IMG/VR virus record: IMGVR_UViG_3300007770_001284
Coordinates: 186,001 to 250,000 of that record
Direction: 5' to 3' (one strand)
DNA length: 64,000 bases
Shown here: positions 39,912 to 58,425 of the stretch, in pieces
Layout of the letters: each line of letters opens with the position of its first letter
Numbering within the stretch: position 1 is the first letter of the stretch
Program-made: the position numbers and the translations under genes
Notes under the pieces: model-generated
What the model was told of the DNA's origin: nothing
What the model saw: the letters and a program-made list of their open reading frames with translations, nothing else
Databases searched by the model: none

Positions 39912-40793
39912 TTATTTTTTGCTTCTTCCAAATAAGCGGCCTCTTTCTTTTTTCGTTCCACCACCACGTTGTTCCAGTTCCGTTTCGATCCATTTTTTAC
40001 CAATCGGATTTTTAATAGGTCGATTGACAAATCCACCCACCGCTTTCTGTACTGCTTCGTCGACAGGGCCGTACACTGTGTTGTCAACAATCGAAATGTT
40101 TCCCTGTCCAAATAATCCTTGGAATGCGCCAAGGTTTGCTTGAACGTCTGTCCAGATTTCTTCAACTTTTTTCGGCGGCAGCTTTCTTGGTCGGTTCATA
40201 TTTCTTTCTTGCGCAACCTCAAGCGTTGTGTTGACAAAAATCATGTAGGTATCATAGCCAAGTTTTTCCATGGCCTCTTTTTTCTTTTCAATTTTGGCTA
40301 GATCATCACCGGTTCCATCGATAATAACACCGAGCCGTGCCGTTGACTTTGTGTATTGCTGCGTAGCTGCTGTCTTGTATTGTTTTGCTTTCCCTCGAGG
40401 TGAGCTGGCAGGTACACCACGTTCATCGTCAAGTCCTAGCTCATAAGCTTTTTCGGGATCTTCTCTTGCAATTCTTGCAAGATCGCCTGGGTCGACACCT
40501 GCTTCTTCAAGATATTTTTCAAAAGCTGGATCAGAGTTAATAATTTTAAGTCCCATGGCCGTCGAAGCCGACAATTCATTTGCGAGGCTTCCGCCAAAGA
40601 GCACTTTTGCCGTAAAGCTTTTTCCGCTTCCTGGACCGCCAGCCATAAAGACAGCTTTAAGAATTCCAGGATCGTAGATACCTTCGCTTAATAATTCTCT
40701 GATCGCTTCTCGGAGCGTGATCAGTTCATGCTTTGAAAGCTCTTCTCTAATAATATACTGTAATTGCTGTTTAGAGACATTTAGCTTTTTCAT
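39912..40793 (-). CDS. P-loop kinase (AAA_33/zeta-toxin-like) with double leader
   Basis: AGGPGSGKS, IIDGTG, ERNMNRPR; N-term QLQYIIREEL..LREAIRELLSE. Confidence 0.75.
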   Translation of the reverse strand: MKKLNVSKQQLQYIIREELSKHELITLREAIRELLSEGIYDPGILKAVFMAGGPGSGKSFTAKVLFGGSLANELSASTAMGLKIINSDPAFEKYLEEAGVDPGDLARIAREDPEKAYELGLDDERGVPASSPRGKAKQYKTAATQQYTKSTARLGVIIDGTGDDLAKIEKKKEAMEKLGYDTYMIFVNTTLEVAQERNMNRPRKLPPKKVEEIWTDVQANLGAFQGLFGQGNISIVDNTVYGPVDEAVQKAVGGFVNRPIKNPIGKKWIETELEQRGGGTKKERGRLFGRSKK

Positions 40794-40859
40794 TGCTATT
40801 CCATCGCACACATACGCTTTTCATAAATATGCGGTCCGGCCAGATAAAAATGCTTAAGC

Positions 40860-42164: not shown

Positions 42165-42509
42165 TGGTGGAGGCGGCGGGAGTCGAACCCGCGTCCAAAG
42201 CAGTTTAGGGATCAAGTCATTCACAGGTTTAGACAGTTTTTCTAAACTGACAAATCTTCCGCTGGTGAAACCCCCCTGCTCGCGGATACAAGGTTCGAGC
42301 ATTATTTTATTTCAGTGATGCTACTTCACTTAGCCTAAATTGGATAGATGGTTTTAGGCAACCACCCGATTACGCAGCTAGGGCGTATTCGAAGTGATTG
42401 TTGTTATTGGCAACTATCTTTTTTGAAACCGCGATTTAGGTCTGCTGTTTCCTGAGACCACCTGCACTCTTATACTCCTTTGCTACCCTGTCGAAGCCAT
42501 ATCGCCCCC
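42165..42509 (-). ncRNA. ssrA: tmRNA; tag peptide ANNNNHFEYALAA (42411-42370)
   Basis: 5' GGGGGCG pairs with 3' CGCCUCC-ACCA including G3:U70; T-arm GCGGG-UUCGACU-CCCGC; UAGUU before resume codon GCC; tag ends YALAA-stop. Confidence 0.95.
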
Positions 42510-42562: not shown

Positions 42563-43318
42563 ATGCCTATACGAAAAATAGTTGCATTTGATTTTGATGA
42601 CACGCTGGCGGTTACTGAATCGCGAATCGGTGTTCAGCGCCCAGAGGCAGCTGGAACGTCCTCTCCCACGTTAGAAGACTGGTTGCTAGACCACAATATT
42701 CAATATATGGATGTAACGGGTACGGGTGGTAATGAGTTTTATTGGTTAGATTCTGCAAATTTTGCATTGTATGAAGAGCATGCTGAAGGATTTGAGGATG
42801 TGATTGATTACGTTGGGACATCTTCATTTGATGTGAGCAAAGCTCAAGTGATTACCCCAATGTTAAAAAAGCTGGTTGAAGCAGAATCAGATCCTGATAC
42901 GCTAGCATTAATCATAACGGCGAGAGCAGGGAAGAAGCAGATGTACAGTCCGTCTCAGGGAACGTCAGTAAAGCCCTTAAACCGCTCCCAGATCCTTCAG
43001 TTCTTAAAAGATAATGGAATCAGCTTTGATGACAGCAGATTACATACAGTGGGTGACCAGGGCTCTAATAGCGCTGCACACAAGGTCAACGTATTGACTG
43101 GATATCTAAACAAGTATAAACCAGATGAGTTAATTTTTTATGATGATAACGAAAATAATGTAAGGGCAGTTGCTGCATTGTGTAAGCAATTTGCTCCGTC
43201 AGTGAAGATATCAGCTTTCCGCGTGGCAGCGGGGTGGATTTCTTCGGAATCTGGGTGCAATGAAACGGTTAATTTACGCTTGAAAAAGATACTTAGTCGT
43301 ACAGGCCGCGCTCGTTAG
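42563..43318 (+). CDS. HAD-family phosphatase
   Basis: AFDFDDT, ITAR, K, FYDD. Confidence 0.75.
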   Translation: MPIRKIVAFDFDDTLAVTESRIGVQRPEAAGTSSPTLEDWLLDHNIQYMDVTGTGGNEFYWLDSANFALYEEHAEGFEDVIDYVGTSSFDVSKAQVITPMLKKLVEAESDPDTLALIITARAGKKQMYSPSQGTSVKPLNRSQILQFLKDNGISFDDSRLHTVGDQGSNSAAHKVNVLTGYLNKYKPDELIFYDDNENNVRAVAALCKQFAPSVKISAFRVAAGWISSESGCNETVNLRLKKILSRTGRAR

Positions 43319-43348
43319 ACGTTGGCCGCCCTAATAGGACGTGCCGGA

Positions 43349-43888
43349 ATGTCATTATTGCGAGAATATATCAAAGAAATTCTTAATGAAAGCATTGAGT
43401 TTCGGACGCTTGATTCTCCCCTTAAGTACAGTCGCGCTTCAGATATAAAAAGAATAGCACTTTGCGATACATCGGTAGAAGAACCCCACATGGGCCCTAC
43501 TGGCAAGCCCAAAATAGATGCATACTTCAACCAAAGACAAGAGATGGAATATTATGGCGCTTCGGGTCGACGATTAAAGAAACCGAGAAAGGGCCAGCTG
43601 GTTCCCGGGGTTTCTGATGCTTGCGTTATTGGATTTTTAGACTACCACAAAGAAGGTGTTTCGTCAGGCGGAAATGATATGTGGTACATTGACTATATGA
43701 AGACTCGTGGTGATAAAGGTGGCCAAGGGACTGCCAGCATGCTGATTGATGAATTTTATAACACTGTTGCCAAACCTGGTGACAACGTTAGTTTTGGTAA
43801 GATGATGCGGAAAGAGATCGGTCACCTCAAAGATAAGATGGTAGACAAGTATCCAGAAGTTAGCACTAGAGGAGCAGTGAATTTCTAA
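43349..43888 (+). CDS. LLREY-leader protein, GNAT-like
   Basis: MSLLREYIKEILNE; YIDYMKTR..GGQGTASMLI. Confidence 0.55.
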   Translation: MSLLREYIKEILNESIEFRTLDSPLKYSRASDIKRIALCDTSVEEPHMGPTGKPKIDAYFNQRQEMEYYGASGRRLKKPRKGQLVPGVSDACVIGFLDYHKEGVSSGGNDMWYIDYMKTRGDKGGQGTASMLIDEFYNTVAKPGDNVSFGKMMRKEIGHLKDKMVDKYPEVSTRGAVNF

Positions 43889-44148
43889 TGAAAATCACAA
43901 GACGACAGATTAGACAGATCATTGCTGAAGAGCTTGCGCTCGATCTTGAGGTTGGAGACATCATACTAACCGGTCGCTTCAAGAACAAGCGAACGGTGGT
44001 CAAGAAACTTGGTACCGATGACCTGGGCCAACCGACTGTGAATGGCATGAAAGTGTTAGCGTTCAGGATTGAAAAATTGATGCCGAAAGAGAAGTGGAGC
44101 AAGAAGACAATCGCCGAACTTGAGAAGGAAGAGGAAGATAAGAAATGA
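43888..44148 (+). CDS. Leader-bearing small SH3-like protein
   Basis: MKITRRQIRQIIAEE; LEVGDIILTGRFKNK. Confidence 0.55.
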   Translation: MKITRRQIRQIIAEELALDLEVGDIILTGRFKNKRTVVKKLGTDDLGQPTVNGMKVLAFRIEKLMPKEKWSKKTIAELEKEEEDKK

Positions 44149-44825
44149 GGTTAACTGAATCTGCTTTACGACATTTGATACGCAGAACGTTGTTGGAAAA
44201 GAGCTGGGCTGATTTCCAGGCACCCAAGGGAAAGACCATCCCTATCGATCCTGCAGATTTTGCAACCAATACTCCGAACGTGCGTGACTTGGATGAAGAA
44301 ATATTTGACCTGATACAAGTTGCATATCAAGATGTCGAGCTAACGCCGGCGTCGGAAGAGGGCCCAGCGACATTTGGCAACATCAAAATTCAAAGTCCAG
44401 GGGATCTACCCTATAAATACACTATCATGAAGGGAGCCGACATAGACGAAGATCCTGACCCCGATTATTTTCGCGGCGGAAAGATGGTCAAGGGCCGATT
44501 CAAGCTGGGCATCGTCGGCCATGATGGAACTCGTGCTGCAATCGATCGCTATCTCGAAGAGACAGCAGCAGATCTAAGAGCTGGTGCAATTGCAGAGATG
44601 TCAGGGAAGATTGCACATATCATGATCACTCGACATGGAGTCCCTGCAGTTCAGACAGAGGAGGCTGTGGAAGCGATGCTAGGTAAAGAGGTGGACTGGA
44701 CAGGCCGACATCCTAACGAGAAATATGCGAATAGGTACGGGCCTGATTATGAGGCTTGGTATTGTCGTGGTATCTCGGGGGCATGCGCCGGAGACCACAT
44801 GAAGATTCTACTGGGCGGCGGATGA
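44145..44825 (+). CDS. Leader-bearing hypothetical protein
   Basis: MRLTESALRHLIRRTLLE. Confidence 0.55.
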   Translation: MRLTESALRHLIRRTLLEKSWADFQAPKGKTIPIDPADFATNTPNVRDLDEEIFDLIQVAYQDVELTPASEEGPATFGNIKIQSPGDLPYKYTIMKGADIDEDPDPDYFRGGKMVKGRFKLGIVGHDGTRAAIDRYLEETAADLRAGAIAEMSGKIAHIMITRHGVPAVQTEEAVEAMLGKEVDWTGRHPNEKYANRYGPDYEAWYCRGISGACAGDHMKILLGGG

Positions 44826-45292
44826 TGCAATTATTGAACGAATATGCAAGAGAGATTATGACATCGCAGGTTGACTCCGGATGTATTGATCTACGTGTAC
44901 GTGGCTTTAAAGTTAACGCTGAGCTGGCAACAACGACAGAAGCAAGAAATCGAGGCTTGATGCATAGACAATCGATGAATGAGGATGATGGTATGTTGTT
45001 CGTTTTCCCTGACACCGACTATCGTTCATTTTGGATGGAGAATACCTTCATCCCGTTGTCGATTGCTTATCTAACAGAAGCTGGAAAAATTATTAATATA
45101 GAGCGGATGCATCCTTTTAACCGAACTTCTGTAAGGTCAACAGAGCCAGCAAAGTATGCGCTAGAAATGAATGCTGGCTGGTTTAAGAAGCGAGGCGTTC
45201 AAGTTGGTGATGTTGTAAGTGGTATTTCTTCCATGAACGAGTCTATGCTCCGCGAGTACGTAAGAACTTTGCTAATAGAACAGAGCGGGTAA
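44822..45292 (+). CDS. DUF192-like protein with leader motif at both ends
   Basis: RGLMHR..GMLFVF..FWMENTFIPLSIAY..ALEMNAG; N-term LLNEYAREIM, C-term MLREYVRTLLIE. Confidence 0.8.
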   Translation: MMQLLNEYAREIMTSQVDSGCIDLRVRGFKVNAELATTTEARNRGLMHRQSMNEDDGMLFVFPDTDYRSFWMENTFIPLSIAYLTEAGKIINIERMHPFNRTSVRSTEPAKYALEMNAGWFKKRGVQVGDVVSGISSMNESMLREYVRTLLIEQSG

Positions 45293-45295
45293 TTC

Positions 45296-46933
45296 ATGAC
45301 TCTCCTCCGCGAATGCGTAAAAGAAATGCTTGTAGAAAGTAATGTACTTGCTACAGGAATGTGTTTTCCTTTCGCATACCAGAAAGCTGAAGAGTGGTTT
45401 AACGATCACTTTACGAAGGCTAAGCCGGGCCGCGGCCCAAAGAGGCACCCGAACTTAAATGACAAGAGTAAGTTCAAAGTTGTTCATGGTACAGTAACAG
45501 ATAAGTGGAAGAAGCCGCCGAAGCCAGTTGTTCATGGGTGGGTTGAAATGGGAGATCTAGTCTTTGATGATCAGACCAGAATAACAAAACCAAATGGTAT
45601 TGAAAAAGAATTCTATTACGATATGTATCAGCCTGAGGTGTACAAGGAGTTCACTGCTGAAGAGGCTATACTCAATTGTGCGATGAAGGGTGGTGAAGGG
45701 CCTTGGGATGATGATCTCTATGTGATGATGCAGGACCGTGATGCATGGATGAATGAAGCGCTACTTCGAGAAGCTACCGCGATTCGTGAGCCGTTAAATC
45801 TCTCTGTACCAGAAGACTTGAAAGATATCCACCGTCGTATGCAGCAAGCGGGAAAAGAATTATATGTCGTTGGAGGTGCTGTTCGTGATGCGTTGATGGG
45901 GAAGACTCCCAAAGATTACGATGTCGCTACGAATGCAACTCCAGACCAGGTGATTCGAATTTTACAGAGCCATGGCAGACTCAGGCTTGACTTAACAGGA
46001 AAAGCTTTTGGTGTGGTGAGAGTGAAGACCCCCGACAAAAATGAATACGAGATTGCAACATTTAGAGAAGATATAGGCCCCGGTCGTCGACCTGAGGGCG
46101 TGGCATTCACCAGTATAGAGGGTGATGTAAAAAGACGCGATCTGACAGTGAACGCGTTGTTCTATGATATGAATACAGGCGAGGTCGTTGATTACGTTGG
46201 TGGAATAAAAGACATTGAAGACGGCGTAATTCGAGCCGTTGGAGATCCAGCCCAACGTTTTGATGAAGACAGGCTACGTATTTTACGTACTATTCGATTC
46301 GCAGGCCGAATGGGCGCAGAGCTGGATCCTGCTACAAAGGCTGCAATTCTTAAAGACAATAGTTTGACTGATGTTAGCCCAGAGCGTATAAGGGAAGAAT
46401 TTTTGAACGGTGTTAGTTCTGCTGCTAACCTTGATCACTTTATAAACCTGATAACAGAACTGGGATTGTTTGAGCAGATATTCCCGGGTCTTCAAATTAC
46501 ACCGCTTTCTGGTACAGCCAGCAATCCGTATGTACAGGTTGCAGCATTGCTGGGTGATAATGCATCACAAGATACGCAGCAGGTGCTGGAAGAAATGCGT
46601 TATTCTCGTAAGCAGATTATTCTTATTAATTTTTTGATTCGATTGAAAAGCATCACAAAAGAAACTGCGCCCCAATTAAAGAAGGACTTCATTCGACACA
46701 AGATTTCTATTAATGATATTGAGGATTTCGCAGCTGTCACCCCTCAGCTTTCTGATCGTGTTGTTCAGGGCTTTTTGAAATTTGTTTCAAATCCGCCAGC
46801 CAGCAATCCACAAGAGCTAATGGCTCAAGGCCTTGCAGGTGAAGCAATAGGACAAGCTATGAAGGCAGCTGAGGTTGATGCATATTCGAGTTTGGTTGGC
46901 GAGTTAAGGTCGTACATACGGGAGCTATTATGA
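45296..46933 (+). CDS. Polyprotein: Cys-His-Asp (papain/transglutaminase-like) domain + class II CCA-adding tRNA nucleotidyltransferase
   Basis: GMCF..VVHG..HGWVE..DD; then VVGGAVRD..KDYDVAT, RRDLTVNAL, FDEDRLRILRTIRF, VSPERIREE. Confidence 0.8.
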   Translation: MTLLRECVKEMLVESNVLATGMCFPFAYQKAEEWFNDHFTKAKPGRGPKRHPNLNDKSKFKVVHGTVTDKWKKPPKPVVHGWVEMGDLVFDDQTRITKPNGIEKEFYYDMYQPEVYKEFTAEEAILNCAMKGGEGPWDDDLYVMMQDRDAWMNEALLREATAIREPLNLSVPEDLKDIHRRMQQAGKELYVVGGAVRDALMGKTPKDYDVATNATPDQVIRILQSHGRLRLDLTGKAFGVVRVKTPDKNEYEIATFREDIGPGRRPEGVAFTSIEGDVKRRDLTVNALFYDMNTGEVVDYVGGIKDIEDGVIRAVGDPAQRFDEDRLRILRTIRFAGRMGAELDPATKAAILKDNSLTDVSPERIREEFLNGVSSAANLDHFINLITELGLFEQIFPGLQITPLSGTASNPYVQVAALLGDNASQDTQQVLEEMRYSRKQIILINFLIRLKSITKETAPQLKKDFIRHKISINDIEDFAAVTPQLSDRVVQGFLKFVSNPPASNPQELMAQGLAGEAIGQAMKAAEVDAYSSLVGELRSYIRELL

Positions 46934-48549
46934 AGATGTATCATGCAACCACTCCAGCAAATGCTCGTGATATATTAGCGAACGGTCTTGAGGTTGATGC
47001 TACCGGCGAAGCGGGCTATACCCAGGTGCACGCTCAATGGGCAGACCAGCTTTATGGTATGCGGCCTGTTTTTCTATCTGTTAAAAAGGGAAAATTCGCC
47101 GGGATTCCCTTGTTGGTCGACACAGAGGGATTATCCCTTGTAGCGGATTTAGCAGCTGTCGCAGACCTGGGAGACGAGCCCCCCAGCTTGGATGGAGATG
47201 AACTTATTTGGTGGGATGGAATCGGTCCAGAAGAATTATCCCCTATAGCAAGTGACGGCGCGGTCAATATAGAAAATTTGCTTGTTCCCGGAAGTAGGGA
47301 AGCCAAGTTAGCAATTGCAGTTACGGGAACAGCGGCAGTGTTGGAAGATATTCCGCCTGATAGAATCAAGATTGCTTCATATAATGAAGCTTTCCTACGC
47401 GAGTATGTAAGAGAGGTGTTGAGCGAAGAAGTGGAACGCCAAACGGTGGGAAGCGTTTTAGACGCTTTAGGAGCGATAAAGGGCGTCGATGATGAAGCCC
47501 AGCGCAAAGAGCGTATGAAAAAGCTTGCTAAGAAAATTGGTTGGGAAATGGTCAAATTCATTCCTGTGGTTGGAAAAGGAATCAAGATGGCCAAGACAAT
47601 CGGTGATATTTACAAATTAGCAAAAGACACTCCCGATGATCTGGCCACGAAAGACAACGTCGTTCTAGACATGCTGGATGTTGATGATAAGTATCAGCAA
47701 ATGTTGGATGATCGGCTTGAAGCTGCATTCGATGAGGTCGTGATTCCTTGGCTCGAAAGCCTTCCACCAGATGCTCCACTCCCTGACATGAATAATAAAT
47801 TGGAGGCTTGGGTTAATCAAAATTTCGATGAGCGAGGAATCCACGGCGCAGCCGGGGGTGTACCAGCTAGTTCATCTCCTGTAATGAAGCAAGAAAATGT
47901 CGAGTTATCGTTGCGTCAGTACGTAAGGACAATGTTGGAGGCCGGTGAACTTGGTCGGCAAATATTTTCTGATAGGGCTCCGCTGGGACGTCATATGGGA
48001 TCCGAAAGAGACACAGAGCTAGAGGGAGAAATTTGGACGGCATTATGGGGTCACCTGCAAGGCCTTAGTTCAAAAGTGCCTACAAACTTGCTAGATGCGA
48101 TGGTAAGTTTTTCCAAAGATCCAGCTTATAACGACGTTTTCATACTACATACGAGTGGCGACGCCTACCGCGGCATGGAAGTTTCACAAGAATACTTGGA
48201 TGAACACGCGCCTGGCTGGAAAGAAGCAACATGGCCAACATCGAAACTTCACTGGCAGTGGTCTGATGTTATCCCGGTTGATTTCGAATATCAAAACCGG
48301 AATGAATCAAGAACAGTGTCTTCATGGACTCCATCAAGAGACGTGGCCGAGCAATTCGGTCGAGCCGGACACGGTATGGTGGGAGTAGTTTTAATCGCAG
48401 ATTCGGCAACGAATACGTTTCTTGACTTGAAGGAATTGTACAGATTCGATCGTCTAGACGACTTTCATTGGGAAGAGGAGATCGTCGGATTTGGTTCCGT
48501 TCGAGTTAAGGGAATTAAAATCTTGAAGAAACTCGGGGGGCTCGGATGA
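46930..48549 (+). CDS. Polyprotein: ART-like domain + helical domain + R-S-E ADP-ribosyltransferase-like domain
   Basis: MYHAT..ILANGL..VFLS; linkers LREYVREVLSE and LRQYVRTMLE; AYRGM..VSSWT..VAEQF..EEEIV. Confidence 0.6.
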   Translation: MKMYHATTPANARDILANGLEVDATGEAGYTQVHAQWADQLYGMRPVFLSVKKGKFAGIPLLVDTEGLSLVADLAAVADLGDEPPSLDGDELIWWDGIGPEELSPIASDGAVNIENLLVPGSREAKLAIAVTGTAAVLEDIPPDRIKIASYNEAFLREYVREVLSEEVERQTVGSVLDALGAIKGVDDEAQRKERMKKLAKKIGWEMVKFIPVVGKGIKMAKTIGDIYKLAKDTPDDLATKDNVVLDMLDVDDKYQQMLDDRLEAAFDEVVIPWLESLPPDAPLPDMNNKLEAWVNQNFDERGIHGAAGGVPASSSPVMKQENVELSLRQYVRTMLEAGELGRQIFSDRAPLGRHMGSERDTELEGEIWTALWGHLQGLSSKVPTNLLDAMVSFSKDPAYNDVFILHTSGDAYRGMEVSQEYLDEHAPGWKEATWPTSKLHWQWSDVIPVDFEYQNRNESRTVSSWTPSRDVAEQFGRAGHGMVGVVLIADSATNTFLDLKELYRFDRLDDFHWEEEIVGFGSVRVKGIKILKKLGGLG

Positions 48550-50354
48550 GCTTGCTTCGAGAATATGTTAACGTCCCTCCAGAGGAAGAACTCCACCCAA
48601 GTCAGATGAAGACTGTCGGTGAGATCTTGGATCTTATCGAACGTATCCAAGAAGAAACAGACGAAGCCGGCCGTCGGGTGCGTAGTGCAAATGTCGGGAT
48701 TGAATTCATAAAGATCGCCATGGGGGAGATACCACTCGTTGGTGGTGCGCTTGGTGCCGCAGATGGATTATTTGCCATGTACCAAGCGGGGAAGAATGAG
48801 GAACACACCTGGGCCGAGCTGGAAGAGTATCCCATTCTGGCTCGGATGAAGATGCACCCTTCTTTGGCCAAACACCTCGATCCTGTAACACTGAAAGAAA
48901 TTGATAAAGCATATCAGGGCTATCTTCAGGGTCTTGGTCGCGAGACGCTAGTCAGCGAAATCACAGATATCGATAATTTTACGCATGATTGGATTATGGG
49001 TGATACAGACAGCAAGCTTAGCGTGGAGCTCCTACGTGAGTACGTAAGAGAACAATTTCTACTTGAAAGAGAGGAAGCAGAAGCGTCCCTGCTTTCAGGG
49101 GTGAGTGACTTTATAGAGACTCGTCATTATGATGACGTGTTAGATGCTGCGTTTAAACGCATAGCCCCTGGTTTAGTTCGTCATGTCATGGAGCAAGAAA
49201 TCAACGAGGATGTTGCTGAATTTCTTGATGGCGCAATAGAGGGTCGGTGGGAGAAACAAAAAGGGTGGTCTTTTGAAGATCCAAGTCCAAAACAGTTGGG
49301 TCACTCTGAGGATTCTGCCGATTACATATTGGGGTACTCATGGGGCTGGAATAATGCAGACTCGTGGGAAGGTAATCGATTGCCGACCCAAGCCAGGAAA
49401 GAAGCAGTTGAGGCGCAGATCGCAGAATTTGAAGATCAAATATCTGAGCAGATGGTCATTGCGGCGCTGGAAACTGCCAATGAAAAGGTTAACCCCGTTA
49501 AGCTCATCAAAAAGGCAATTGGTGCAATTCGTAGTGCAGTTCGGGAAGAGGGTCTTTCTGGTGGCCTCAAAAAGGGCTTGCCTATCGCGATAGGAATTAT
49601 TGTAGGGGAGGCACTCGATAATTTTATTATACCCATGGCATTCTTTTCGATGACCGGCATTCCCATCCCTCCGCTTCCGATTGGAGTGGGGGAAATCATT
49701 AATCCCGTAGTGATCAGTATGGTCGGTGCCGATATAGAGTCAGACGAACTAGTTGATGAGCTAGGGTGGTACGAGGAAGAGTACGGAGAGGCATCTTCGC
49801 TGGGTCCTCGAGAGACGAACGAGTTACGTGCGTATATACGAGAAGCGTTACTTACAGAGTATTGGCCTGCCCGTACAGAGGGCAAGAAAAATGTCTGGCG
49901 TGGCATGAAGATCAAGATGTCACCAGCTATTTTGGCTTCAAAGGTCCGTCAGTACATTAAGACTGGCGAAGAGAAAGGAATTACGCAGCAAGAATTGATA
50001 AGATTTTTGCTTGGCCGTCTTGAGGGCGAAAGTACGGGTGCATCATGGTCGCTCAGCTTTGATGTTGCTGTTAGTTTTGCAGATGCCTGGGGAGCAACAA
50101 ACCGTGGCGCCGAACTCCACGTCATATTTCAAGCCACGGTCGATGAAGAAGCTGGATACGATCCTCAGGCTGCAGGCGAAGAGCCCGGCTTGTTTTACGA
50201 TGAGGCAGAAGTAAGGTTTAAGCCTGGCGCTGAGATACCTCTCACTGGAATTTACGTCTTTATCAAGTCTAAGGATCAGTGGGCCAAGCAAAGGACTCAG
50301 TTCCGGCCTCTAATGATAAAGGCAGAAGACAATCCGATGATGGTAAAGGCATGA
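48546..50354 (+). CDS. Polyprotein: helical domain + hydrophobic-hairpin domain + R-S-E ADP-ribosyltransferase-like domain
   Basis: Three LREY motifs; VWRGM..GASWSLSFDVAVSFA..EAEV. Confidence 0.6.
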   Translation: MSLLREYVNVPPEEELHPSQMKTVGEILDLIERIQEETDEAGRRVRSANVGIEFIKIAMGEIPLVGGALGAADGLFAMYQAGKNEEHTWAELEEYPILARMKMHPSLAKHLDPVTLKEIDKAYQGYLQGLGRETLVSEITDIDNFTHDWIMGDTDSKLSVELLREYVREQFLLEREEAEASLLSGVSDFIETRHYDDVLDAAFKRIAPGLVRHVMEQEINEDVAEFLDGAIEGRWEKQKGWSFEDPSPKQLGHSEDSADYILGYSWGWNNADSWEGNRLPTQARKEAVEAQIAEFEDQISEQMVIAALETANEKVNPVKLIKKAIGAIRSAVREEGLSGGLKKGLPIAIGIIVGEALDNFIIPMAFFSMTGIPIPPLPIGVGEIINPVVISMVGADIESDELVDELGWYEEEYGEASSLGPRETNELRAYIREALLTEYWPARTEGKKNVWRGMKIKMSPAILASKVRQYIKTGEEKGITQQELIRFLLGRLEGESTGASWSLSFDVAVSFADAWGATNRGAELHVIFQATVDEEAGYDPQAAGEEPGLFYDEAEVRFKPGAEIPLTGIYVFIKSKDQWAKQRTQFRPLMIKAEDNPMMVKA

Positions 50355-50902
50355 ACCTCCTCCGTGAATGCATAGAAGAGCTGCTCCGTGAGTCTCATTT
50401 TCCATTGACAGGTGGAGAGAAGGTGCGCATCCACCACAGCCGACAAGACACTAGAGACGGTAAAGAACCACAGATCAGTGGTTTTTCACAGAGGGTTGGC
50501 TACAAGCCCAGTGGTCTGTGGTATGAATGCAAAGACGGTAGCTCGATAGACTGGCTGGAATTTTGTAGGACGGGCCTAACGGACGGTGCAAGTAGATATG
50601 ATAGCGCATATAACGTTGTCTTGAATGATTATGAAATCTTGTTCATAACAGATAATCATGATTTTAAGAAATTTGAGAAGATGTACGGCGTTCCCAATAG
50701 CTACGGGGACATCAAGATTGACTGGCCAAAGGTCGCAAGTCATTATGACGGTATTGAGATCTGTCCCTATCTATGGAAAATGCGACCGGACTCGGACTGG
50801 TATTACGGGTGGGACGTAGCGTCAGGGTGCGTGTGGAACGCGTCTGGAATAAAAGAACTTATAAGTGCAGAGGAGGGTTGTGAAGATGAATCCGCTGCGT
50901 GA
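50351..50902 (+). CDS. LLRE-leader hypothetical protein (possible ART-like fold)
   Basis: MNLLRECIEELLRE; IHHS..KPSGLWY..YDGIEI..WDVASGCVWN. Confidence 0.55.
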   Translation: MNLLRECIEELLRESHFPLTGGEKVRIHHSRQDTRDGKEPQISGFSQRVGYKPSGLWYECKDGSSIDWLEFCRTGLTDGASRYDSAYNVVLNDYEILFITDNHDFKKFEKMYGVPNSYGDIKIDWPKVASHYDGIEICPYLWKMRPDSDWYYGWDVASGCVWNASGIKELISAEEGCEDESAA

Positions 50903-51368
50903 GTATATAAGAGAGATCTTGACCGAAGACGCTGACTCTTCTGGAGTCACTATCAGAGTACAAAATTATGGAAATGGAGTCGCAGCTGCTATAATGATGA
51001 GCGGAATGAGAATAGGCTCAGCTACAGCTCGCGAAGTTCTTAAGTACGAGCACTGTACAGAAGATGTAGAGAAACTCAAAGCTCAGGGTTATGATTACGA
51101 TAATCCGAAATTTCCGACCCTGGGGCCGACGCTATATGCGATAGGAGAATCTCATGTGGATGAAGCTTTTAGGGGATTTGGATACGGTAAGAAGTTATAC
51201 AAGGCAATAATTGAAGAGATTGGTAAGCATGTTGGTAATCGTGGTGCCTTTGTCGGCGCTGATGAGTGTGCAGCGGGTTCTACTTCCGGCACCGCGCAGC
51301 GAGTCTGGAAGTCGGTGGGTCGTGATTACCCATCATCTGGTAATGTAGTTTATGTGGGACCAAAATGA
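50886..51368 (+). CDS. LREY-leader GNAT-like acetyltransferase
   Basis: MNPLREYIREILTE; VDEAFRGFGYGKKLY (motif A)..AQRVW. Confidence 0.65.
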   Translation: MNPLREYIREILTEDADSSGVTIRVQNYGNGVAAAIMMSGMRIGSATAREVLKYEHCTEDVEKLKAQGYDYDNPKFPTLGPTLYAIGESHVDEAFRGFGYGKKLYKAIIEEIGKHVGNRGAFVGADECAAGSTSGTAQRVWKSVGRDYPSSGNVVYVGPK

Positions 51369-52009
51369 ACCTGCTTCGCGAATATATCCGAGCTCTGCTC
51401 ACCGAAGCTGCCAAGACCGTGGAAGATCTTCCTGAGGGTGCTTTCGTGACAATACTAAAAAGGTACGGCGGTTCATCAGTGTTCGTATACATCGGCGATG
51501 AGAAGGGAAATCGGTGGAGGACTAGAGAGGAGCACGGGGAGAGGTATGATAATTCCATACACGCAGGAATAGAAATTGCCAAGCCAAGACCGTCAGAGAC
51601 CGGACCTTGTGGCGATGCATTCGTGGTGGAAGGTTCTGGAGCAACTCACGGTTGGGGTCCGTTAGTATATGATGTTGCAATTGAGTACGCATCGCTTGAC
51701 GGATCTGGCGGCTTAATTTCAGATAGAAGTTCGGTTTCTCCTTATGCTCGACGTGTATGGGAATACTATATGAACAACCGACCGGACGTCACAGCGCATC
51801 AATTAGATGACATGAAAGATACGCTAACTCCAGAATGGGAAGATAACTGCCAGCAGTGGATAGCCATGAAGACAACGGTACCAGCATTCACCGCAGAAAA
51901 ATCTGATGATACTCGCTGGGTTGATTCACCGCTCAGTAAGAGATACACGGCACCTCCCAAAACCATCGATGCGCTTCGTGCAGCTGGAAAACTGGTGGAG
52001 ATTGAATAA
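51365..52009 (+). CDS. LLREY-leader GNAT-like protein
   Basis: MNLLREYIRALLTE; HGWGPLVYD..SDRSSVSPYARRVW. Confidence 0.55.
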   Translation: MNLLREYIRALLTEAAKTVEDLPEGAFVTILKRYGGSSVFVYIGDEKGNRWRTREEHGERYDNSIHAGIEIAKPRPSETGPCGDAFVVEGSGATHGWGPLVYDVAIEYASLDGSGGLISDRSSVSPYARRVWEYYMNNRPDVTAHQLDDMKDTLTPEWEDNCQQWIAMKTTVPAFTAEKSDDTRWVDSPLSKRYTAPPKTIDALRAAGKLVEIE

Positions 52010-52473
52010 TGAACCTTCTCCGTGAATACATAAGCGAGCTTTTGACAGAGATAAATCTTGGTCAGGGCTATGGGATAGAATATACAGCATTTGTTCTGGA
52101 CGACGCGTCACATCAGAAGCTAGCCGCTTTTGCTCCCGAAGGCTGGAAAGTCTTTGCTCATCACATGACGATTATTAATCCACCCAACCAGAAATTACGG
52201 TTACCGTCGCAATGGCTTGACCAAGACCTTTGCGTGAGAGTCGTGGGAATTGCACAATCGGCTCAGGTCATGACTGCGCTAGTTGATCTGGAAGGATTAC
52301 CTCTTCCGATGAAGGGACCAGAATATCCTCACATCACTATTGCTACGAATCCAGCAGAGGGTGGCAAGCCTGCGATGTCTAATTGGAAGTTTAAGCCAGT
52401 TATCGATAAGCATAATTTTGAGGCTATTACCTCAATCGTTGTGTGCGGCAGAATAGAGGAAATATTAAGGTGA
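52009..52473 (+). CDS. LLREY-leader 2H phosphoesterase
   Basis: MNLLREYISELLTE; two HxT motifs (HHMTI, PHITI). Confidence 0.75.
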   Translation: MNLLREYISELLTEINLGQGYGIEYTAFVLDDASHQKLAAFAPEGWKVFAHHMTIINPPNQKLRLPSQWLDQDLCVRVVGIAQSAQVMTALVDLEGLPLPMKGPEYPHITIATNPAEGGKPAMSNWKFKPVIDKHNFEAITSIVVCGRIEEILR

Positions 52474-53144
52474 GCTTACTTCGCGAATACATCAGTGAGG
52501 TGCTGCAAGTGACTGCTCGAGTGCAACCCGAGTCCCAGATATTCTGTGACATGGACGGCGTTTTGGTAAATTTTGAAGATATGATTGTGAGATTTATCAA
52601 CGGTCTTTTGGGCGGTGGCATCTCTCCAGGGATTGAAATTACGAAGGGTTACGAGAAGAGGCTAGCAAAAGTACGCGGAGAGCTCGGTCCAGATTGGCGC
52701 GCAAAGGGTCGTCCTGATTTAGATATTAAGTCGGTTCGAAATTTTATGATGGGTGCTGTTGGAGCAAATCCTGGTCCTATATTTGCTGAGATGAAGCCAC
52801 ATGCTGACGCTCTGGAAAAACTTTGGCCATTTCTGACGGGGACTGGTCGGACTGTGAATATACTGACTGCTGAAATTAGGGCGAGAGAGGGAGCTGTTAT
52901 GACAACGGCCGAAGGGAAGGAATTGTGGATACACAGGTGGCTTAAGCCTCAACCTTCTCAAATTATTATGTCACCAGCCAAACAGAAAGCCAGGTATGCA
53001 ACGACCAACGGCATTCCCAACATACTTATTGATGATAAACTTACGACCGTCGACAGCTGGAATGCCGCCGGCGGAATTGGTATCTGGCATCTGCCGGGCG
53101 GAAGCGTAGACACTGTGGAACAGCTAAAGGAATTGGGCGTATGA
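52470..53144 (+). CDS. LLREY-leader HAD 5'(3')-nucleotidase (NT5C-like)
   Basis: GTG start, SLLREYISEVL; FCDMDGVL, ILTA, K, ILIDD, WNAAGGIGI. Confidence 0.8.
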   Translation: MSLLREYISEVLQVTARVQPESQIFCDMDGVLVNFEDMIVRFINGLLGGGISPGIEITKGYEKRLAKVRGELGPDWRAKGRPDLDIKSVRNFMMGAVGANPGPIFAEMKPHADALEKLWPFLTGTGRTVNILTAEIRAREGAVMTTAEGKELWIHRWLKPQPSQIIMSPAKQKARYATTNGIPNILIDDKLTTVDSWNAAGGIGIWHLPGGSVDTVEQLKELGV

Positions 53145-55264: not shown

Positions 55265-56075
55265 CTTCGAAAAATTTAAGGTGCTTGGGTATATCCGTCC
55301 AGCTGAGGTATTTTTTACGTTAGGCGAATGGCGTACCGTTGTGGAAGAATTAATAGAGCTTCAGTCCCGTGGATTCGACACGAGGTCAGGTAAAATCAGC
55401 TGTAAACATATGTCTTTTTGCACACAAGAAGATATGGATCGATTCGTACAACTTATTGCAAAATTCTGGGGCTATCAGCTCACAGTAGAGGTGGATAGAT
55501 ATGACCTCCTGACAAGCAAAAATGTTCTTGATTTCATAGAGGACTTCGTGAACCATCGCTTTTGGGGGTTCGAGAATGAATTTAGCCATTACTTCCCAGA
55601 CGTCTCTAAATTGAAGTTTGCATACTTTTATTCTCGTGGGGATATCGAACCATATGTGATGTTGGACGATGAATACACGACGCAGCTTTATGGTACCCTG
55701 GAAAATCCAGCAGATCTATGGCACTTTACAAGCCCGGATGGGTTAGATCGTTTGTCCCGCGCGATAGAAGCTGGAGAGCAATTTGATATTTCAACTTTCA
55801 CTGTAGCTGAGCGGATGTTTTTCAGAAAGACTTCCACTCTTACTGTTAGGTTAGTAGGAAATGTAAGGGCTGCGTTCCGTAGCGATATAAAGTCTTTGGC
55901 TCTGGATAACGGCAGACGAGCGTGCAACATGTATCGCCTTGAGTATCCCGGTAGGGCAGCGAATAATATTTGCTATGATTTAGACAAGTGCTTAGATCCA
56001 GAGGGCGTACAGACTGGATTATGGAATGAGTATATTGCAACGCCGCTCGAGATTATAAGCGTCGAATCATCTTAA
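55257..56075 (+). CDS. Hypothetical protein
   Basis: Last gene of the array; LWHFTS..ISTFT..WNEYI may be ART-like. Confidence 0.55.
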   Translation: MGNFEKFKVLGYIRPAEVFFTLGEWRTVVEELIELQSRGFDTRSGKISCKHMSFCTQEDMDRFVQLIAKFWGYQLTVEVDRYDLLTSKNVLDFIEDFVNHRFWGFENEFSHYFPDVSKLKFAYFYSRGDIEPYVMLDDEYTTQLYGTLENPADLWHFTSPDGLDRLSRAIEAGEQFDISTFTVAERMFFRKTSTLTVRLVGNVRAAFRSDIKSLALDNGRRACNMYRLEYPGRAANNICYDLDKCLDPEGVQTGLWNEYIATPLEIISVESS

Positions 56076-58035: not shown

Positions 58036-58350
58036 ATGTATGTAAGAGATGCAAACGTTGGTGATGTGATTCGTGTTGTCGGTGATAATAAGGGTGTTCG
58101 ACAAAGCATTTTTCGTATATCACAAGAAGAAAGAGACGAAGCGCGTAAGCATGGTTTTATGATTGGATTTGTTCGTCATTTCTGGAAAGGTAATCCTGAC
58201 AAGCCATATGACATGGTATATCTTGGTCCAGTAAGCACAAGGATTCCCGTGGCTGGCCTTTTTAAACATCATTTATTTTTGACTCCAGATGGTACGTACG
58301 GGATAGAGGGATATGACTTTCGATATTTGGAGAAAATTACAGGGCGATAG
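58036..58350 (+). CDS. Hypothetical protein
   Basis: VGDVIRV; stop codon lies inside the tRNA 5' end. Confidence 0.5.
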   Translation: MYVRDANVGDVIRVVGDNKGVRQSIFRISQEERDEARKHGFMIGFVRHFWKGNPDKPYDMVYLGPVSTRIPVAGLFKHHLFLTPDGTYGIEGYDFRYLEKITGR

Positions 58351-58418: not shown

Positions 58419-58425
58419 CTTAAAA

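What the first reader, a model, noticed from the sequence alone, without database searches (positions are those of the whole stretch)
45233..46990. Orphan C-terminal tags suggest cassette shuffling or fusion/fission at the tag DNA
Seen: the DUF192 gene ends SMLREYVRTLLIEQSG-stop and the CCA gene ends ELRSYIRELL-stop, so each has a tag with nothing behind it. The second abuts, by ATGA overlap in the -1 frame, gene 46930, which lacks its own N-terminal tag. The tag DNA is also similar between copies (roughly CTNCGNGARTAYRTA). Inference: the tag-coding DNA acts as short homology for recombinational insertion and deletion of modules, giving an integron-like array without an integrase. A single indel or frameshift here would fuse two polyproteins.
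Basis: partly seen in the sequence, partly recalled or inferred. Interest (0 to 1): 0.6.

Follow-up and report, generated by a model that had tools for sequence, protein, structure and literature searches.

The report
Peptide-tagged enzyme cassettes in jumbo phage
An uncultured giant phage with a T4-type head carries about twenty enzyme modules that each start with the same 14-residue peptide tag, and related phages show these tag-plus-module units being swapped, fused and split at the tags; the tag may be a signal for loading the enzymes into the capsid, but that is untested.

Summary
The DUF192 gene (44822-45292) ends NESMLREYVRTLLIEQSG-stop. The CCA gene (45296-46933) ends GELRSYIRELL-stop and overlaps the next, untagged gene by ATGA.

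Both ends are copies of a 14-residue tag, consensus MNLLREYIRELLTE. The tag occurs about 19 times in window 40.7-54.6 kb and, above noise, nowhere else in the 254.7-kb phage genome.

About 15 related contigs show tag+module cassettes reordered, fused and split, with junctions at tags. A close relative (85-92% nt) keeps both "orphan" tags and the ATGA overlap. It differs from the window by a tag-to-tag indel, a cassette indel whose crossover lies in the first 20 nt of a tag, and an in-register hybrid tag. In three other relatives the tag after CCA is followed in frame by three different modules.

The tag is conserved as a peptide (pN/pS 0.12). Its DNA similarity equals what codon usage predicts, and synonymous sites are not conserved. 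The orphan tags are also under purifying selection.

Best reading, inferred only: a T4 CTS-like capsid-targeting and prohead-protease signal. The phage has a gp21-family protease, portal and capsid protein, and 94-97% of tags end [LIVMF]-x-E.

The parts
44822..45292 (+). DUF192 gene. It has an aberrant N-terminal tag (MMQLLNEYAREIMTSQ, 44828-44869), the DUF192 domain, and a C-terminal 'orphan' tag (NESMLREYVRTLLIEQSG, 45236-45289), then the stop.
   Evidence: Pfam PF02643, E 1.9e-32. Tag profile scores are 17.4 and 18.8 bits. The close relative L066 has T-D-decayed tag-K'-like module-NESTLREYVRTLLIEQSR-stop. For the orphan tag, synonymous differences are 6.5 of 8.8 sites and nonsynonymous 1.5 of 30.2.
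45296..46933 (+). Two-module gene. Parts: N-terminal tag (45296-45340), module E (45341-45757), decayed internal tag ALLREATAIRE (45758-45790), CCA-adding enzyme (45797-46897), and a truncated C-terminal 'orphan' tag GELRSYIRELL (46898-46930), then the stop.
   Evidence: PF01743, E 9e-37, and PF12627. In relatives CCA is its own gene starting with a tag (L019, L020, L048). E is a separate gene in L020, L024 and L029. After CCA the orthologous tag is followed in frame by a 127-aa module (L019), a 156-aa module (L020) or the Q nucleotidase module (L048).
46930..48549 (+). Three-module gene G-tag-H-tag-I. The start overlaps the CCA stop as ATGA. There is no N-terminal tag. Internal tags lie at 47392-47430 and 47908-47943. 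Module I carries R / S-x-S / E-x-E residues typical of ADP-ribosyltransferases, seen by eye only.
   Evidence: The same ATGA overlap is present in L066. H occurs as T-H-x113 in L043 and as S-t-H in L039. No Pfam or PHROG family matched G, H or I.
48546..50354 (+). Three-module gene J-tag-K-tag-L. It starts with a cut-short N-terminal tag (MSLLREYVN, 48546-48572). Internal tags lie at 49026-49061 and 49818-49856. Module L has an ADP-ribosyltransferase-like fold.
   Evidence: K is a separate gene in L013 and ends with its own orphan tag. In L066 the 91.5% homology ends inside the tag at about 49042 and a different module follows. L model: pLDDT 81. The best structural matches are nearly all ADP-ribosyltransferase-fold proteins, Z 5-6.2. 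R27, S75 and E128-x-E130 are invariant.
43349..43888 (+). Single cassette: tag (43352-43393) + module A.
   Evidence: Tag score 20.1 bits. Module A follows an internal tag in L018 and L023 and is fused behind module R in L013 and L019.
43888..44825 (+). Two genes, B (43888-44148) and C (44145-44825). Both start with a variant helix (MKITRRQIRQIIAEEL; MRLTESALRHLIRRTLLEK).
   Evidence: In L013, C follows a regular tag plus an extra module in one frame.
50351..53144 (+). Five single cassettes, each tag + module:
- M (50351-50902)
- N (50886-51368), weak GNAT match
- O (51365-52009)
- P (52009-52473), 2H phosphoesterase-like
- Q (52470-53144), 5'-3' deoxyribonucleotidase
   Evidence: Tags score 15.1-22.2 bits. 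Q matches phrog_2643, E 5e-16. M matches phrog_8582, E 5.6e-18. P is weak against PF08302, E 0.009. N is weak against PF00583. The order is M,N,O here but O,M,N in L013. Actinophage homologs of M lack the tag.
53141..55264 (+). Three-module gene R-tag-S-tag-U. R is a HAD phosphatase. Tags lie at 53720-53761 and 54527-54562. U carries an HExxH motif (HELEH, 54908-54922).
   Evidence: R matches PF10307 HAD_SAK_1, E 1.6e-16. R is followed by tag+A in L013 and L019 and by tag+L in L024. An S-module tract at 95.5% nt to L018 begins right after the tag, at 53773. HELEH position.
42563..43318 (+). Untagged HAD-family gene at the head of the array. It was used as the anchor to find relatives.
   Evidence: PF11019, E 2.1e-5; PF10307 weak. 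It is conserved at 48-69% aa in seven related contigs directly upstream of the arrays.
39915..40820 (-). Kinase-like gene (Zeta_toxin/AAA_33) on the other strand, with one internal tag copy (LITLREAIRELLSEG, 40680-40718).
   Evidence: PF06414, E 1.7e-8. Tag score 14.6 bits.

Best explanation
**What it is (shown).** The window holds a 14-kb array in an uncultured jumbo phage with a T4-type head.
- The unit of the array is a cassette: a 14-residue tag (consensus M-N-L-L-R-E-Y-I-R-E-L-L-T-E) followed by one enzyme module.
- A gene holds one to three cassettes in frame.
- Among related phages, cassettes are gained, lost, reordered, fused and split, and the junctions lie at or inside the tag-coding DNA.

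**The two C-terminal tags of the finding.** They are the leading tags of junctions whose downstream partner is missing in this lineage.
- Behind CCA, relatives carry three different in-frame modules after the orthologous tag.
- In the DUF192 gene, a close relative has an extra decayed tag and a K'-like module in front of the same terminal tag. The window differs by a tag-to-tag indel.
- Both terminal tags are old enough to be shared with that relative, and both are kept by purifying selection as peptides.

**How the shuffling works (inferred).** General recombination acts on the short, imperfect similarity of the tag DNA. The phage encodes a RecA-family protein and no integrase was found. Selection then keeps only in-frame, whole cassettes.

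**What the tag does (inferred, not shown).** It works like the capsid targeting sequence of T4 internal proteins.
- It would be an exposed amphipathic helix that brings the protein into the prohead core.
- The gp21-family prohead protease would then cut after the Glu of its terminal [L/I/V/M]-x-E.
- At internal tags the protease would also cut at the hydrophobic-x-E that often precedes them. Polyproteins would thus be cut into single enzymes inside the capsid and injected with the DNA.
- A terminal tag with nothing behind it could still target its protein, or be trimmed off harmlessly.
For: **Cassette structure and shuffling**
- 109 distinct tags were collected from this genome and relatives: 84 N-terminal, 23 internal, 3 C-terminal.
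- Cassette maps of 16 related loci show the same module alone, first, internal or last in a gene, almost always with a tag in front.
- Synteny blocks against L013 end within tens of bases of tags.

**Close relative L066 (85-92% nt)**
- A roughly 750-nt indel is bounded by a decayed tag and by the first codon of the NES-tag.
- A tag+module cassette is present between I and J. Window 48546-48565 aligns to both flanking tags.
- Homology ends inside a tag at about 49042, leaving a hybrid tag.
- CCA-tag-X1, CCA-tag-X2 and CCA-tag-Q occur in L019, L020 and L048.

**Selection on the peptide**
- Tags have pN/pS 0.12, like the modules (0.08-0.20). The orphan tags change mostly synonymously.
- Synonymous sites are scrambled within the genome.

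**The tag is an add-on, not part of a fold**
- Homologs of CCA, DUF192 and M outside the clade lack it.
- In the AlphaFold model of tag+L, residues 1-13 form a detached helix with pLDDT below 50 beside a confident domain.

**Link to T4-type head assembly**
- The genome has a gp21-family protease (PF03420, E 2.3e-25), a T4 portal (PF07230, E 4.9e-74) and Gp23 capsid protein (PF07068, E 1.4e-66), in T4 order.
- T4 gp21 cuts after L/I-X-E. The 10-residue CTS alone loads foreign proteins. Alt loses propeptides at both ends (PMC9026906).
- Tag conservation stops at the Glu of [LIVMF]-x-E, which is present in 102 of 109 tags.
- Internal tags are weaker overall (11.3 against 16.9 bits, p 2e-6) but keep that end (94% against 97%).
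- 10 of 22 internal tags are directly preceded by hydrophobic-x-E, against a background of 2.4%.
- Cargo resembles known injected enzymes: module L has an ADP-ribosyltransferase fold with an R/S/ExE triad, like T4 Alt (PMC5512222).

**Recombination machinery**
- RecA family present; tyrosine integrase not found.
Against: - No data show that any tagged protein is in virions or is cut at the tag.
- The complex prediction of protease with a tagged N-terminus gave no verdict.
- A profile of the tag-like N-terminus of the head-cluster protein p143 does not hit the array tags. No sequence link to a known head protein was found.
- The most conserved tag positions are L3, R4, Y6 and I7, not the L-x-E end.
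- Three other candidate proteases lie in or beside the array: a Trypsin_2 peptidase at 56067-56795(-), an HExxH motif in module U, and a Cys/His module E.
- The T4 late-promoter motif is not enriched, so timing of expression is unknown.
- Junctions at tags are also what selection alone would leave, because tags sit at every domain boundary.
- Exact matches between tag copies in this genome are at most 12 nt.
Confidence: 0.55

Rival explanations
1. The tag is a docking or assembly helix used in the infected cell, not in the capsid. All tagged enzymes (RNA-repair-type enzymes, ADP-ribosyltransferase-like modules, nucleotidases) would bind one shared hub or bundle together into a multi-enzyme body. 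Internal tags would be flexible connectors that are never cut.
For: - The tag has the pattern of a four-turn amphipathic helix, with hydrophobic residues at positions 2,3,6,7,10,11.
- It is modelled as a free helix.
- The best-conserved positions are in the helix body rather than in the L-x-E end.
- Several modules belong together functionally: CCA enzyme, HAD_SAK_1 phosphatase, kinase, 2H-like esterase.
- The array lies next to a tubulin-like gene and a tmRNA.
Against: - No conserved hub protein was identified.
- This reading does not explain why 94-97% of tags end in [LIVMF]-x-E, or why internal tags are so often preceded by a second such motif.
- It does not explain why internal tags relax in the helix body but not at that end.
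Confidence: 0.2
2. The tags are cleavage sites of a polyprotein system run by a protease of the array itself, as proposed for phage 'polyvalent proteins', with or without packaging. Candidate proteases are the Trypsin_2 peptidase just downstream, the HExxH module U and the Cys/His module E.
For: - Trypsin_2 (PF13365, E 9e-18) lies at 56067-56795(-), and part of it is syntenic in L024.
- HELEH lies at 54908-54922, and further HExxH modules occur in the arrays of relatives.
- Module E has invariant Cys23, His64 and His80. Its weak best fold matches are papain/transglutaminase-like enzymes, Z 2.7-4.5.
- Polyvalent proteins are predicted to be processed by zincin-like peptidases (PMC5512222).
Against: - 84 of 109 tags sit at the N-terminus of single-module proteins, where no separation is needed. 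Cleavage between modules therefore cannot be the tag's only role.
- The Trypsin_2 protein has a hydrophobic, signal-like N-terminus.
- No Pfam peptidase family matches U or E.
- The fold matches for E are below any safe threshold.
Confidence: 0.15
3. The two C-terminal tags are neutral scars or artefacts: a sequencing frameshift at 46930, or a recent accident. On this reading they say nothing beyond a broken polyprotein.
For: - The CCA tag is cut two codons short of the usual end.
- It abuts an untagged gene in another frame.
- C-terminal tags are rare: 3 of 109, plus one weak case in L013.
Against: - Three independent contigs are identical here.
- L066 at 85-92% nt has both terminal tags and the same ATGA overlap.
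- Changes in both terminal tags are mostly synonymous.
Confidence: 0.05
4. The conserved element is the nucleic acid, with the peptide a by-product. It would be a recombination site, RNA signal or regulatory motif, in the manner of integron attC sites or T4 PeSL elements.
For: - The DNA pattern recurs far above chance.
- It forms direct-repeat families of 30-34 nt.
- Crossovers map inside it.
Against: - Codon choice at identical residues is random (0.335 against 0.313).
- Synonymous divergence between close relatives is higher in tags than in modules, while amino acids are kept.
- The element always lies in frame, on the coding strand.
- No Rfam family other than tmRNA was found in the region.
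Confidence: 0.03

Closest known systems
Capsid targeting sequence (CTS) of T-even phage internal proteins IPI-III and other gp21 substrates such as Alt
   Same: - A short N-terminal peptide is the only thing shared by otherwise unrelated proteins of a variable locus.
- It ends in a hydrophobic-x-Glu motif, like the site of the gp21 prohead protease.
- The phage has gp21-, gp20- and gp23-family head genes.
- The cargo includes an ADP-ribosyltransferase-like module, as with Alt.
- T4 facts are from PMC9026906, PMC3012670 and PMC12373910.
   Different: - The peptide is 14 residues with a different sequence. The T4 CTS is 10 residues, and its sequence is known to me only from memory.
- There are about 20 copies per genome instead of 3.
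- A fifth of copies are internal and join modules into polyproteins.
- The cargo is mostly enzymes of 140-370 residues rather than small basic proteins.
- Genes are packed with ATGA overlaps and lack the promoter/stem-loop spacers of the T4 IP loci.
- Packaging and cleavage are not shown here.
PeSL-mediated modular shuffling in hyperplastic regions of T4-type genomes
   Same: - Short conserved sequences flank variable genes and serve as preferred crossover points for the phage's own recombination system.
- The authors themselves compared this with integrons that lack an integrase (PMC2839356, PMC4122927).
- Here, crossovers map in the conserved element in a close relative.
   Different: - PeSLs are about 100-bp intergenic promoter plus stem-loop elements conserved as DNA.
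- Here the shared element is coding, about 42 nt, and conserved only as a peptide.
- Exchanges here must be in frame and can create fusion proteins.
- No mini-circles or other intermediates were looked for.
Polyvalent proteins of phages and conjugative elements (Iyer, Burroughs, Anand, de Souza, Aravind 2017)
   Same: - Several unrelated enzymatic domains share one polypeptide.
- They are predicted to be delivered with the DNA and processed into pieces.
- They show extensive domain mosaicism (PMC5512222).
- The window has four such genes.
   Different: - That work has no occurrence of 'linker' in its text and, in the passages read, no repeated inter-domain tag.
- Its hallmark domains (MuF, zincin-like peptidase) are not confirmed here. 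There is only an HExxH motif and a PHROG 'head morphogenesis' hit at E 0.009.
- Most cassettes here are single-module genes.
Integron gene cassettes (own knowledge)
   Same: An array of promoterless, one-way cassettes that vary between relatives.
   Different: - No IntI-type integrase was found.
- There are no non-coding attC hairpin sites. The repeat is a translated peptide.
Polymorphic toxin loci (CdiA-CT after VENN, Rhs tips after PxxxxDPxGL) with orphan modules (own knowledge)
   Same: A conserved peptide motif marks the border where variable C-terminal modules are exchanged. Leftover 'orphan' pieces keep part of the motif-coding DNA.
   Different: - Those are secreted bacterial toxins with immunity genes.
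- Here the locus is in a phage, no immunity genes are evident, modules are mostly repair or metabolic enzymes, and the motif precedes every module rather than one tip.

Membership tests
T4-type CTS / internal-protein cargo | A short N-terminal peptide shared by otherwise unrelated proteins of one phage | tested here: met
   84 N-terminal copies in front of more than 20 unrelated module families. Homologs outside the clade lack it.
T4-type CTS / internal-protein cargo | The peptide ends in the gp21 cleavage motif L/I-X-E | tested here: met
   [LIVMF]-x-E is at the tag end in 102 of 109 copies, and conservation stops at the Glu. The motif definition is from PMC9026906.
T4-type CTS / internal-protein cargo | The phage encodes a gp21-family prohead protease in a T4-type head gene cluster | tested here: met
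   PF03420 E 2.3e-25, PF07230 E 4.9e-74, PF07068 E 1.4e-66, in T4 order at genome 142-152 kb.
T4-type CTS / internal-protein cargo | Tagged proteins are in the virion, cut at the tag, and injected | not testable with these tools
   No proteome or cultured member exists. The complex prediction gave no verdict.
T4-type CTS / internal-protein cargo | Sequence relatedness of the tag to the T4 CTS | not tested
   The T4 CTS sequence is known to me only from memory and is too short for a meaningful search. The tag gives no tblastn match in 50,697 phage records, even at E 10.
Polyvalent proteins | Two or more unrelated enzymatic domains in one phage polypeptide | tested here: met
   E+CCA, G+H+I, J+K+L and R+S+U.
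Polyvalent proteins | A zincin-like processing peptidase or MuF-type packaging domain in the same protein | tested here: inconclusive
   An HELEH motif in U but no Pfam match. PHROG 'head morphogenesis' hit at E 0.009 only.
Integron | IntI tyrosine recombinase | tested here: not met
   PF00589 was not found in the genome, which is 75% complete, while all 14 control genomes matched.
Integron | Non-coding attC recombination sites between cassettes | tested here: not met
   Cassettes abut or overlap (ATGA). The repeat is translated and conserved only as a peptide.
PeSL cassettes of T4-type phages | An intergenic promoter plus stem-loop element of about 100 bp flanking variable genes | tested here: not met
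   There are no intergenic spacers in 43349-55264. The direct repeats found are the tag-coding stretches.

The most novel reading that the evidence does not exclude
A clade of uncultured jumbo phages uses a 14-residue peptide as a general address label. On this reading:
- Any protein that carries the label, at its start or between modules, is loaded into the T4-type prohead.
- The prohead protease cuts it free at the Glu residues that bracket the label, and it is injected with the DNA.
- The 14-kb array is then a fast-shuffling arsenal of about 20 injected enzymes. It would include tRNA/RNA-repair enzymes and ADP-ribosyltransferases, built as polyproteins that are processed inside the capsid.
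- The label-coding DNA would double as the in-frame crossover point that lets phages trade modules.
Probability: 0.35. Interest if true: 0.85.

Novelty: new variant of a known kind. Interest (0 to 1): 0.7.

Why it matters
**If the tag is a packaging and processing signal**
- It would extend the T4 internal-protein principle from three small proteins to a large, modular set of injected enzymes and polyproteins in giant phages.
- It would point to RNA repair and protein ADP-ribosylation as first-minute countermeasures.
- It would offer a natural, portable label for loading foreign proteins into large capsids.

**Independently of function**
- The locus is a clear natural case of domain shuffling at a short conserved peptide-coding element.
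- Fusion, fission, insertion and hybrid-junction events are all visible between close relatives. That bears on how multi-domain phage proteins arise.

**For annotation**
- The tag gives a simple way to recognise this class of accessory genes in metagenomic phage contigs.
- It was found on about 18 large IMG/VR contigs and several contigs binned into MAGs.

Tried and rejected
- **Complex prediction.** Prohead protease (L014:1411-2034) was paired with a tagged N-terminus (window:51365-51484). The result was no verdict, score 0.01, and it is not evidence either way.
- **Sequencing runs.** No reads were laid, and the suggested read-level check for an indel at 46930 was not done.
- **Near-identity and protein searches of deposited phages.** No match was found for the 10-kb array, for the O cassette, for the tubulin-like protein, or for a 22-residue tag query at E 10.
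- **Literature search.** Full-text searches for the tag and for the variant motif as strings found nothing relevant.
- **Head-cluster protein p143.** A profile of its tag-like N-terminus, which is conserved in six genomes, does not find the array tags. I dropped the idea that they are the same element.
- **T4 late promoter TATAAATA.** It occurs 5+2 times against about 10 expected per strand, so nothing can be inferred about timing.
- **Profile of module L against PDB sequences.** Nothing was found. Foldseek gave only E of 0.027 or worse. The fold assignment rests on the second-look aligner and the catalytic triad.
- **Programmed -1 frameshift at the CCA/G overlap.** I considered this and rejected it by eye: CTA TTA TGA has no slippery heptamer.
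- **Huge-phage CCA homologs (LR745206, LR756502).** They carry different N-terminal motifs and are not members of this tag family.
- **Large protein searches.** Statements about absence therefore rest on the IMG/VR and GTDB-genome pattern scans and the tblastn of deposited phages.
- **Other limits.** No alternative genetic code was used.

Full report
**Setting.** The window is bases 186001-250000 of a 254,743-bp IMG/VR virus record. The record is 44% G+C and CheckV rates it 75% complete.
- It is a jumbo phage with a DnaE-type polymerase, ThyX and GroEL.
- It has a T4-type head gene cluster: terminase, T4-family portal, gp21-family prohead protease and Gp23-family capsid protein, in T4 order at genome 140-152 kb.
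- No RNA polymerase beta subunit was found.
- No deposited phage is close. The best polymerase match is 29% identical.

**The observation.**
- The DUF192 gene ends NESMLREYVRTLLIEQSG-stop (PF02643, E 1.9e-32).
- The CCA-enzyme gene ends GELRSYIRELL-stop (PF01743, E 9e-37).
- The ATG of the next gene, which has no tag, overlaps that stop as ATGA.
- Three IMG/VR contigs from other samples are 99.995-100% identical across 35296-56930 with no indel.

**The tag.**
- A profile built from the copies finds 17 hits at E<0.06, all between window 40.7 and 54.6 kb. The rest of the genome has nothing above noise.
- With relatives included there are 109 distinct copies.
- Consensus, with per-cent frequencies: M75 N43 L68 L96 R99 E82 Y94 I84 R86 E67 L65 L86 x E79. 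Conservation stops at that Glu, and 102 of 109 copies have [LIVMF]-x-E there.
- 84 copies sit directly after a start Met, 23 are internal and 3 are C-terminal.
- Internal copies score lower than N-terminal ones (11.3 against 16.9 bits, p 2e-6; this genome left out). They keep the [LIVMF]-x-E end just as often (94% against 97%).
- 10 of 22 internal copies are directly preceded by a hydrophobic-x-Glu triplet, typically M/V-N-E. The background for that triplet is 2.4% per position.

**Peptide or DNA?**
- It is only the back-translation of L-R-E-Y-[IV]. Within the genome, identical residues use the same codon 33.5% of the time against 31.3% expected from codon usage (p 0.13).
- The longest in-register exact match between two copies is 12 nt against 12.6 expected.
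- Tag copies form direct repeats of 30-34 nt at 62-84% identity.
- Against the close relative L066, tags show pS 0.50 and pN 0.059 (ratio 0.12). Modules show pS 0.23-0.32 and ratios 0.08-0.20.
- So the tag is kept as a peptide and synonymous sites are not conserved. They are about twice as diverged as in the modules. That would fit tags having a more mixed ancestry than their modules, but the sample is small.

**The tag is an add-on.**
- CCA homologs in other large phages, DUF192 proteins, and actinophage homologs of module M align without it.
- In the AlphaFold model of tag+module L (pLDDT 81, pTM 0.80), residues 1-13 are a helix with pLDDT below 50, set apart from the domain.

**Relatives.**
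- A degenerate DNA pattern for MN[LF]L[RS]EYI[RS]E hits 23 stretches on about 18 IMG/VR contigs of 20-293 kb. By my own arithmetic the chance expectation is well below one.
- The same pattern hits contigs binned into MAGs labelled Halobacteriovorax, Ca. Peribacter and Flavobacteriales. I do not take binning as host evidence.
- The untagged HAD gene at the head of the array served as an anchor and brought in seven syntenic relatives at 48-69% identity.

**Shuffling across these relatives.**
- Module E is fused in front of CCA only in the window. It is a gene of its own in L020, L024 and L029. It is followed by N in L043 and by a 534-residue stretch in L048, and it lies behind another module in L028 and L013.
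- Module A stands alone, or behind R, or behind other modules.
- Module L is last of three in the window, alone in five relatives, and behind R in L024.
- K is internal in the window. In L013 it is a gene of its own that ends with an orphan tag, followed by an ATGA-overlapping untagged gene. That is the same layout as CCA/G here.
- Gene order also differs: M,N,O here and O,M,N in L013.

**The two tags of the finding: CCA.**
- The native end of the enzyme (…AY-x-x-[LI]-V-G-E) is followed by the tag in all four lineages.
- After the tag comes a 127-residue module in L019, an unrelated 156-residue module in L020, the Q nucleotidase in L048, and a stop in the window.
- A more distant homolog, L006 (42% identity), ends without the tag.
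- In relatives the CCA module itself starts with a tag as a separate gene. In the window that tag has become internal and has decayed to ALLREATAIRE.

**The two tags of the finding: DUF192.**
- L018 has tag-D followed by another module.
- L020 and L024 have D without an N-terminal tag. In L024 it heads a 619-residue polyprotein; the L020 locus ends inside the gene.

**The close relative.** L066 is the 13.1-kb contig DJKT01000027, read on its reverse strand. It is 85-92% identical in DNA to window 43323-49042.
- It keeps both terminal tags (NESTLREYVRTLLIEQSR-stop; GELRLYIRGLL-stop) and the ATGA overlap, base for base in register.
- It differs from the window by three mappable events:
  1. Its DUF192 gene has a decayed tag (ATIREAIVLLE) and a 240-residue K'-like module between the domain and the terminal tag. 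Homology to the window resumes exactly at the first codon of N-E-S-tag (45236).
  2. It has an extra tag+120-residue cassette between I and J. Window 48546-48565, the first 20 nt of J's tag, aligns to both flanking tags.
  3. After J, 91.5% identity runs into the tag and stops at about 49042. The window continues with VREQFLLE and K, while L066 continues with IQALLTE and an L-type module. This is an in-register hybrid tag.
- An apparent insertion inside G in L066 is a run of N and says nothing.
- Both terminal tags have changed mostly synonymously between the two genomes. DUF192 tag: 6.5 synonymous against 1.5 nonsynonymous differences. CCA tag: 5.5 against 2.5.
- The N-terminal tag of DUF192 is aberrant in all three genomes that have it: Asn for the 99%-conserved Arg, and no L-x-E. 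The C-terminal copy may therefore be the working one for that protein. This is an inference.

**How the shuffling works.**
- No tyrosine integrase was found, and the phage has a RecA-family gene.
- T4-type recombination needs only short patches of homology. In T4 relatives it shuffles genes at conserved intergenic PeSL elements, which their discoverers likened to integrons (PMC2839356, PMC4122927).
- Here the only sequence shared by cassettes is the tag-coding stretch.
- The hybrid tag and the 20-nt double alignment favour crossovers guided by that stretch.
- However, tags sit at every module border. Selection for whole, in-frame products would give the same picture, so I treat the mechanism as likely but not shown.

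**What the tag does.** This is the weakest step. In favour of a T4 CTS-like role:
- The head genes are T4-type, including the gp21-family protease.
- T4 gp21 cuts after L/I-X-E. The first 10 residues of IPIII suffice to load foreign proteins. In that CTS the targeting and processing residues are separable. Alt loses propeptides at both ends (PMC9026906).
- T-even internal proteins share nothing but that leader (PMC12373910, PMC3012670).
- The tag here ends in the same kind of motif, and internal copies are bracketed by two such motifs.
- Internal copies relax everywhere except at that end.
- The cargo includes an ADP-ribosyltransferase-like fold with invariant R, S and E-x-E. Its best structural matches are almost all ADP-ribosyltransferase-fold proteins (toxin A subunits, Tpt1, PARP14), at a modest Z of 5-6.2.
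- Other modules are enzymes that would be useful on arrival: the CCA enzyme, a HAD_SAK_1 phosphatase (E 1.6e-16), a 5'-3' deoxyribonucleotidase (E 5e-16), a weak 2H phosphoesterase match, and a kinase.

Against it:
- There is no direct evidence of packaging or cleavage.
- The complex prediction was uninformative.
- The tag-like N-terminus of a head-cluster protein is not detectably the same element.
- Other candidate proteases lie in or next to the array.

**Verdict.**
- The claim that tag DNA is specially similar is not borne out. The homology mechanism is plausible but unproven.
- The "orphan" tags are conserved, selected peptides rather than debris.
- The system is best described as a new variant of the T4 internal-protein/CTS principle combined with polyvalent-protein architecture (PMC5512222).
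- The tag family was not found in the full-text paper library searched or in the deposited phage genomes searched.

Noticed in passing
window 42165-42509 (-): A phage-encoded tmRNA (ARAGORN; Rfam RF00023, 124 bits) with tag peptide ANNNNHFEYALAA. It lies between the tubulin-like gene and the array. It is conserved at 73-90% nt in relatives, well above the ~70% backbone in L013 and L022.
   Followed up: partly
window 40860-42092 (-): A tubulin/FtsZ-like gene. The Pfam Tubulin match (E 7e-5) is below the curated cut-off, but GGGGK and GGGTGS motifs are present. It is 76% identical in L013 and has no match in deposited phages.
   Followed up: partly
window 56067-56795 (-): A Trypsin_2 serine peptidase (PF13365, E 9e-18) with a hydrophobic, signal-like N-terminus. 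It lies directly after the array on the other strand and is partly syntenic in L024. It is a possible alternative protease for the tags.
   Followed up: partly
window 45341-45757 (module E) and its homologs in 9 relatives: A widespread array module with invariant Cys23, His64, His80 and acidic residues. The model is weak (pLDDT 64). Its best, low-scoring fold matches (Z 2.7-4.5) are papain/transglutaminase-like Cys-His enzymes. Function is unknown.
   Followed up: partly
window 54908-54922 (module U); also L024 17308-19167 and L028: HExxH motifs (HELEH here; HEVHH, HELVH and HEAGH in relatives) recur in array modules. They may be zincin-like peptidases of the kind predicted in polyvalent proteins. 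No Pfam match was found.
   Followed up: no
window 43888-43935 and 44145-44204; genome 26050, 27342, 176278; L018 17095-17210: A second, looser N-terminal helix type (MKITRRQIRQIIAEEL, ITTRQLRSLIREVLIKE, MNEEKLRQHIRKILLEE) heads other small genes, some far from the array. In L018 it replaces the regular tag in front of module S.
   Followed up: no
genome 146122-146553 (L014 2584-3015), outside the window: A 143-residue protein sits two genes after the prohead protease. Its N-terminus MAK-x5-LK-x-[LI][VI]KECL-x-EIL-x-E is conserved in six genomes. It is an amphipathic helix ending in L-x-E, but it is not detected by the tag profile, nor the tags by its profile.
   Followed up: yes
genome 253813 (outside the window): One further weak, internal tag-like copy (ESLLRGYVRDLIYEA, 5.3 bits) lies in a 651-residue frame near the end of the record.
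   Followed up: no
L001 (LR745206) 3188-8066 and L002 (LR756502) 4275-7119: The 630-640-kb 'huge phage' genomes with the nearest outside CCA homolog (34-37.5%) have their own recurring N-terminal motifs on CCA and neighbouring genes (M-x-[LI]-x-K-Y-x-x-F-[LI]-[EK]-S; MK[YH]LK[RK]FNEEL). This may be an analogous tagging habit in other giant phages.
   Followed up: no
L013 11340-11500, L019, L020, L048 (behind tags): A conserved stretch of about 40 residues (NEY-x-W ... MLLDK-x-GM-x-x-SDKDN ... SLGLME) recurs directly after a tag and in front of different modules, as a small spacer module.
   Followed up: no
L057/L058 (PBIO01000025, PBIO01000016), L059 (DJKT01000027), L060/L062 (DQKQ01): Array-bearing phage contigs are binned into MAGs named Halobacteriovorax, Ca. 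Peribacter and Flavobacteriales. PBIO01000025 has the same length (101,404 bp) as IMG/VR contig 2788500220_000014. These are probably binning artefacts, not host assignments.
   Followed up: partly
window 58341-63408: Four tRNA genes (Met-CAT, Lys-TTT, Asn-GTT, Arg-TCT) lie downstream of the array. This fits the tRNA/RNA-repair flavour of the cargo (CCA enzyme, HAD_SAK_1, kinase, 2H-like esterase).
   Followed up: no
window 38998: The only difference between the window and two of the three near-identical IMG/VR contigs is C to T at 38998.
   Followed up: yes
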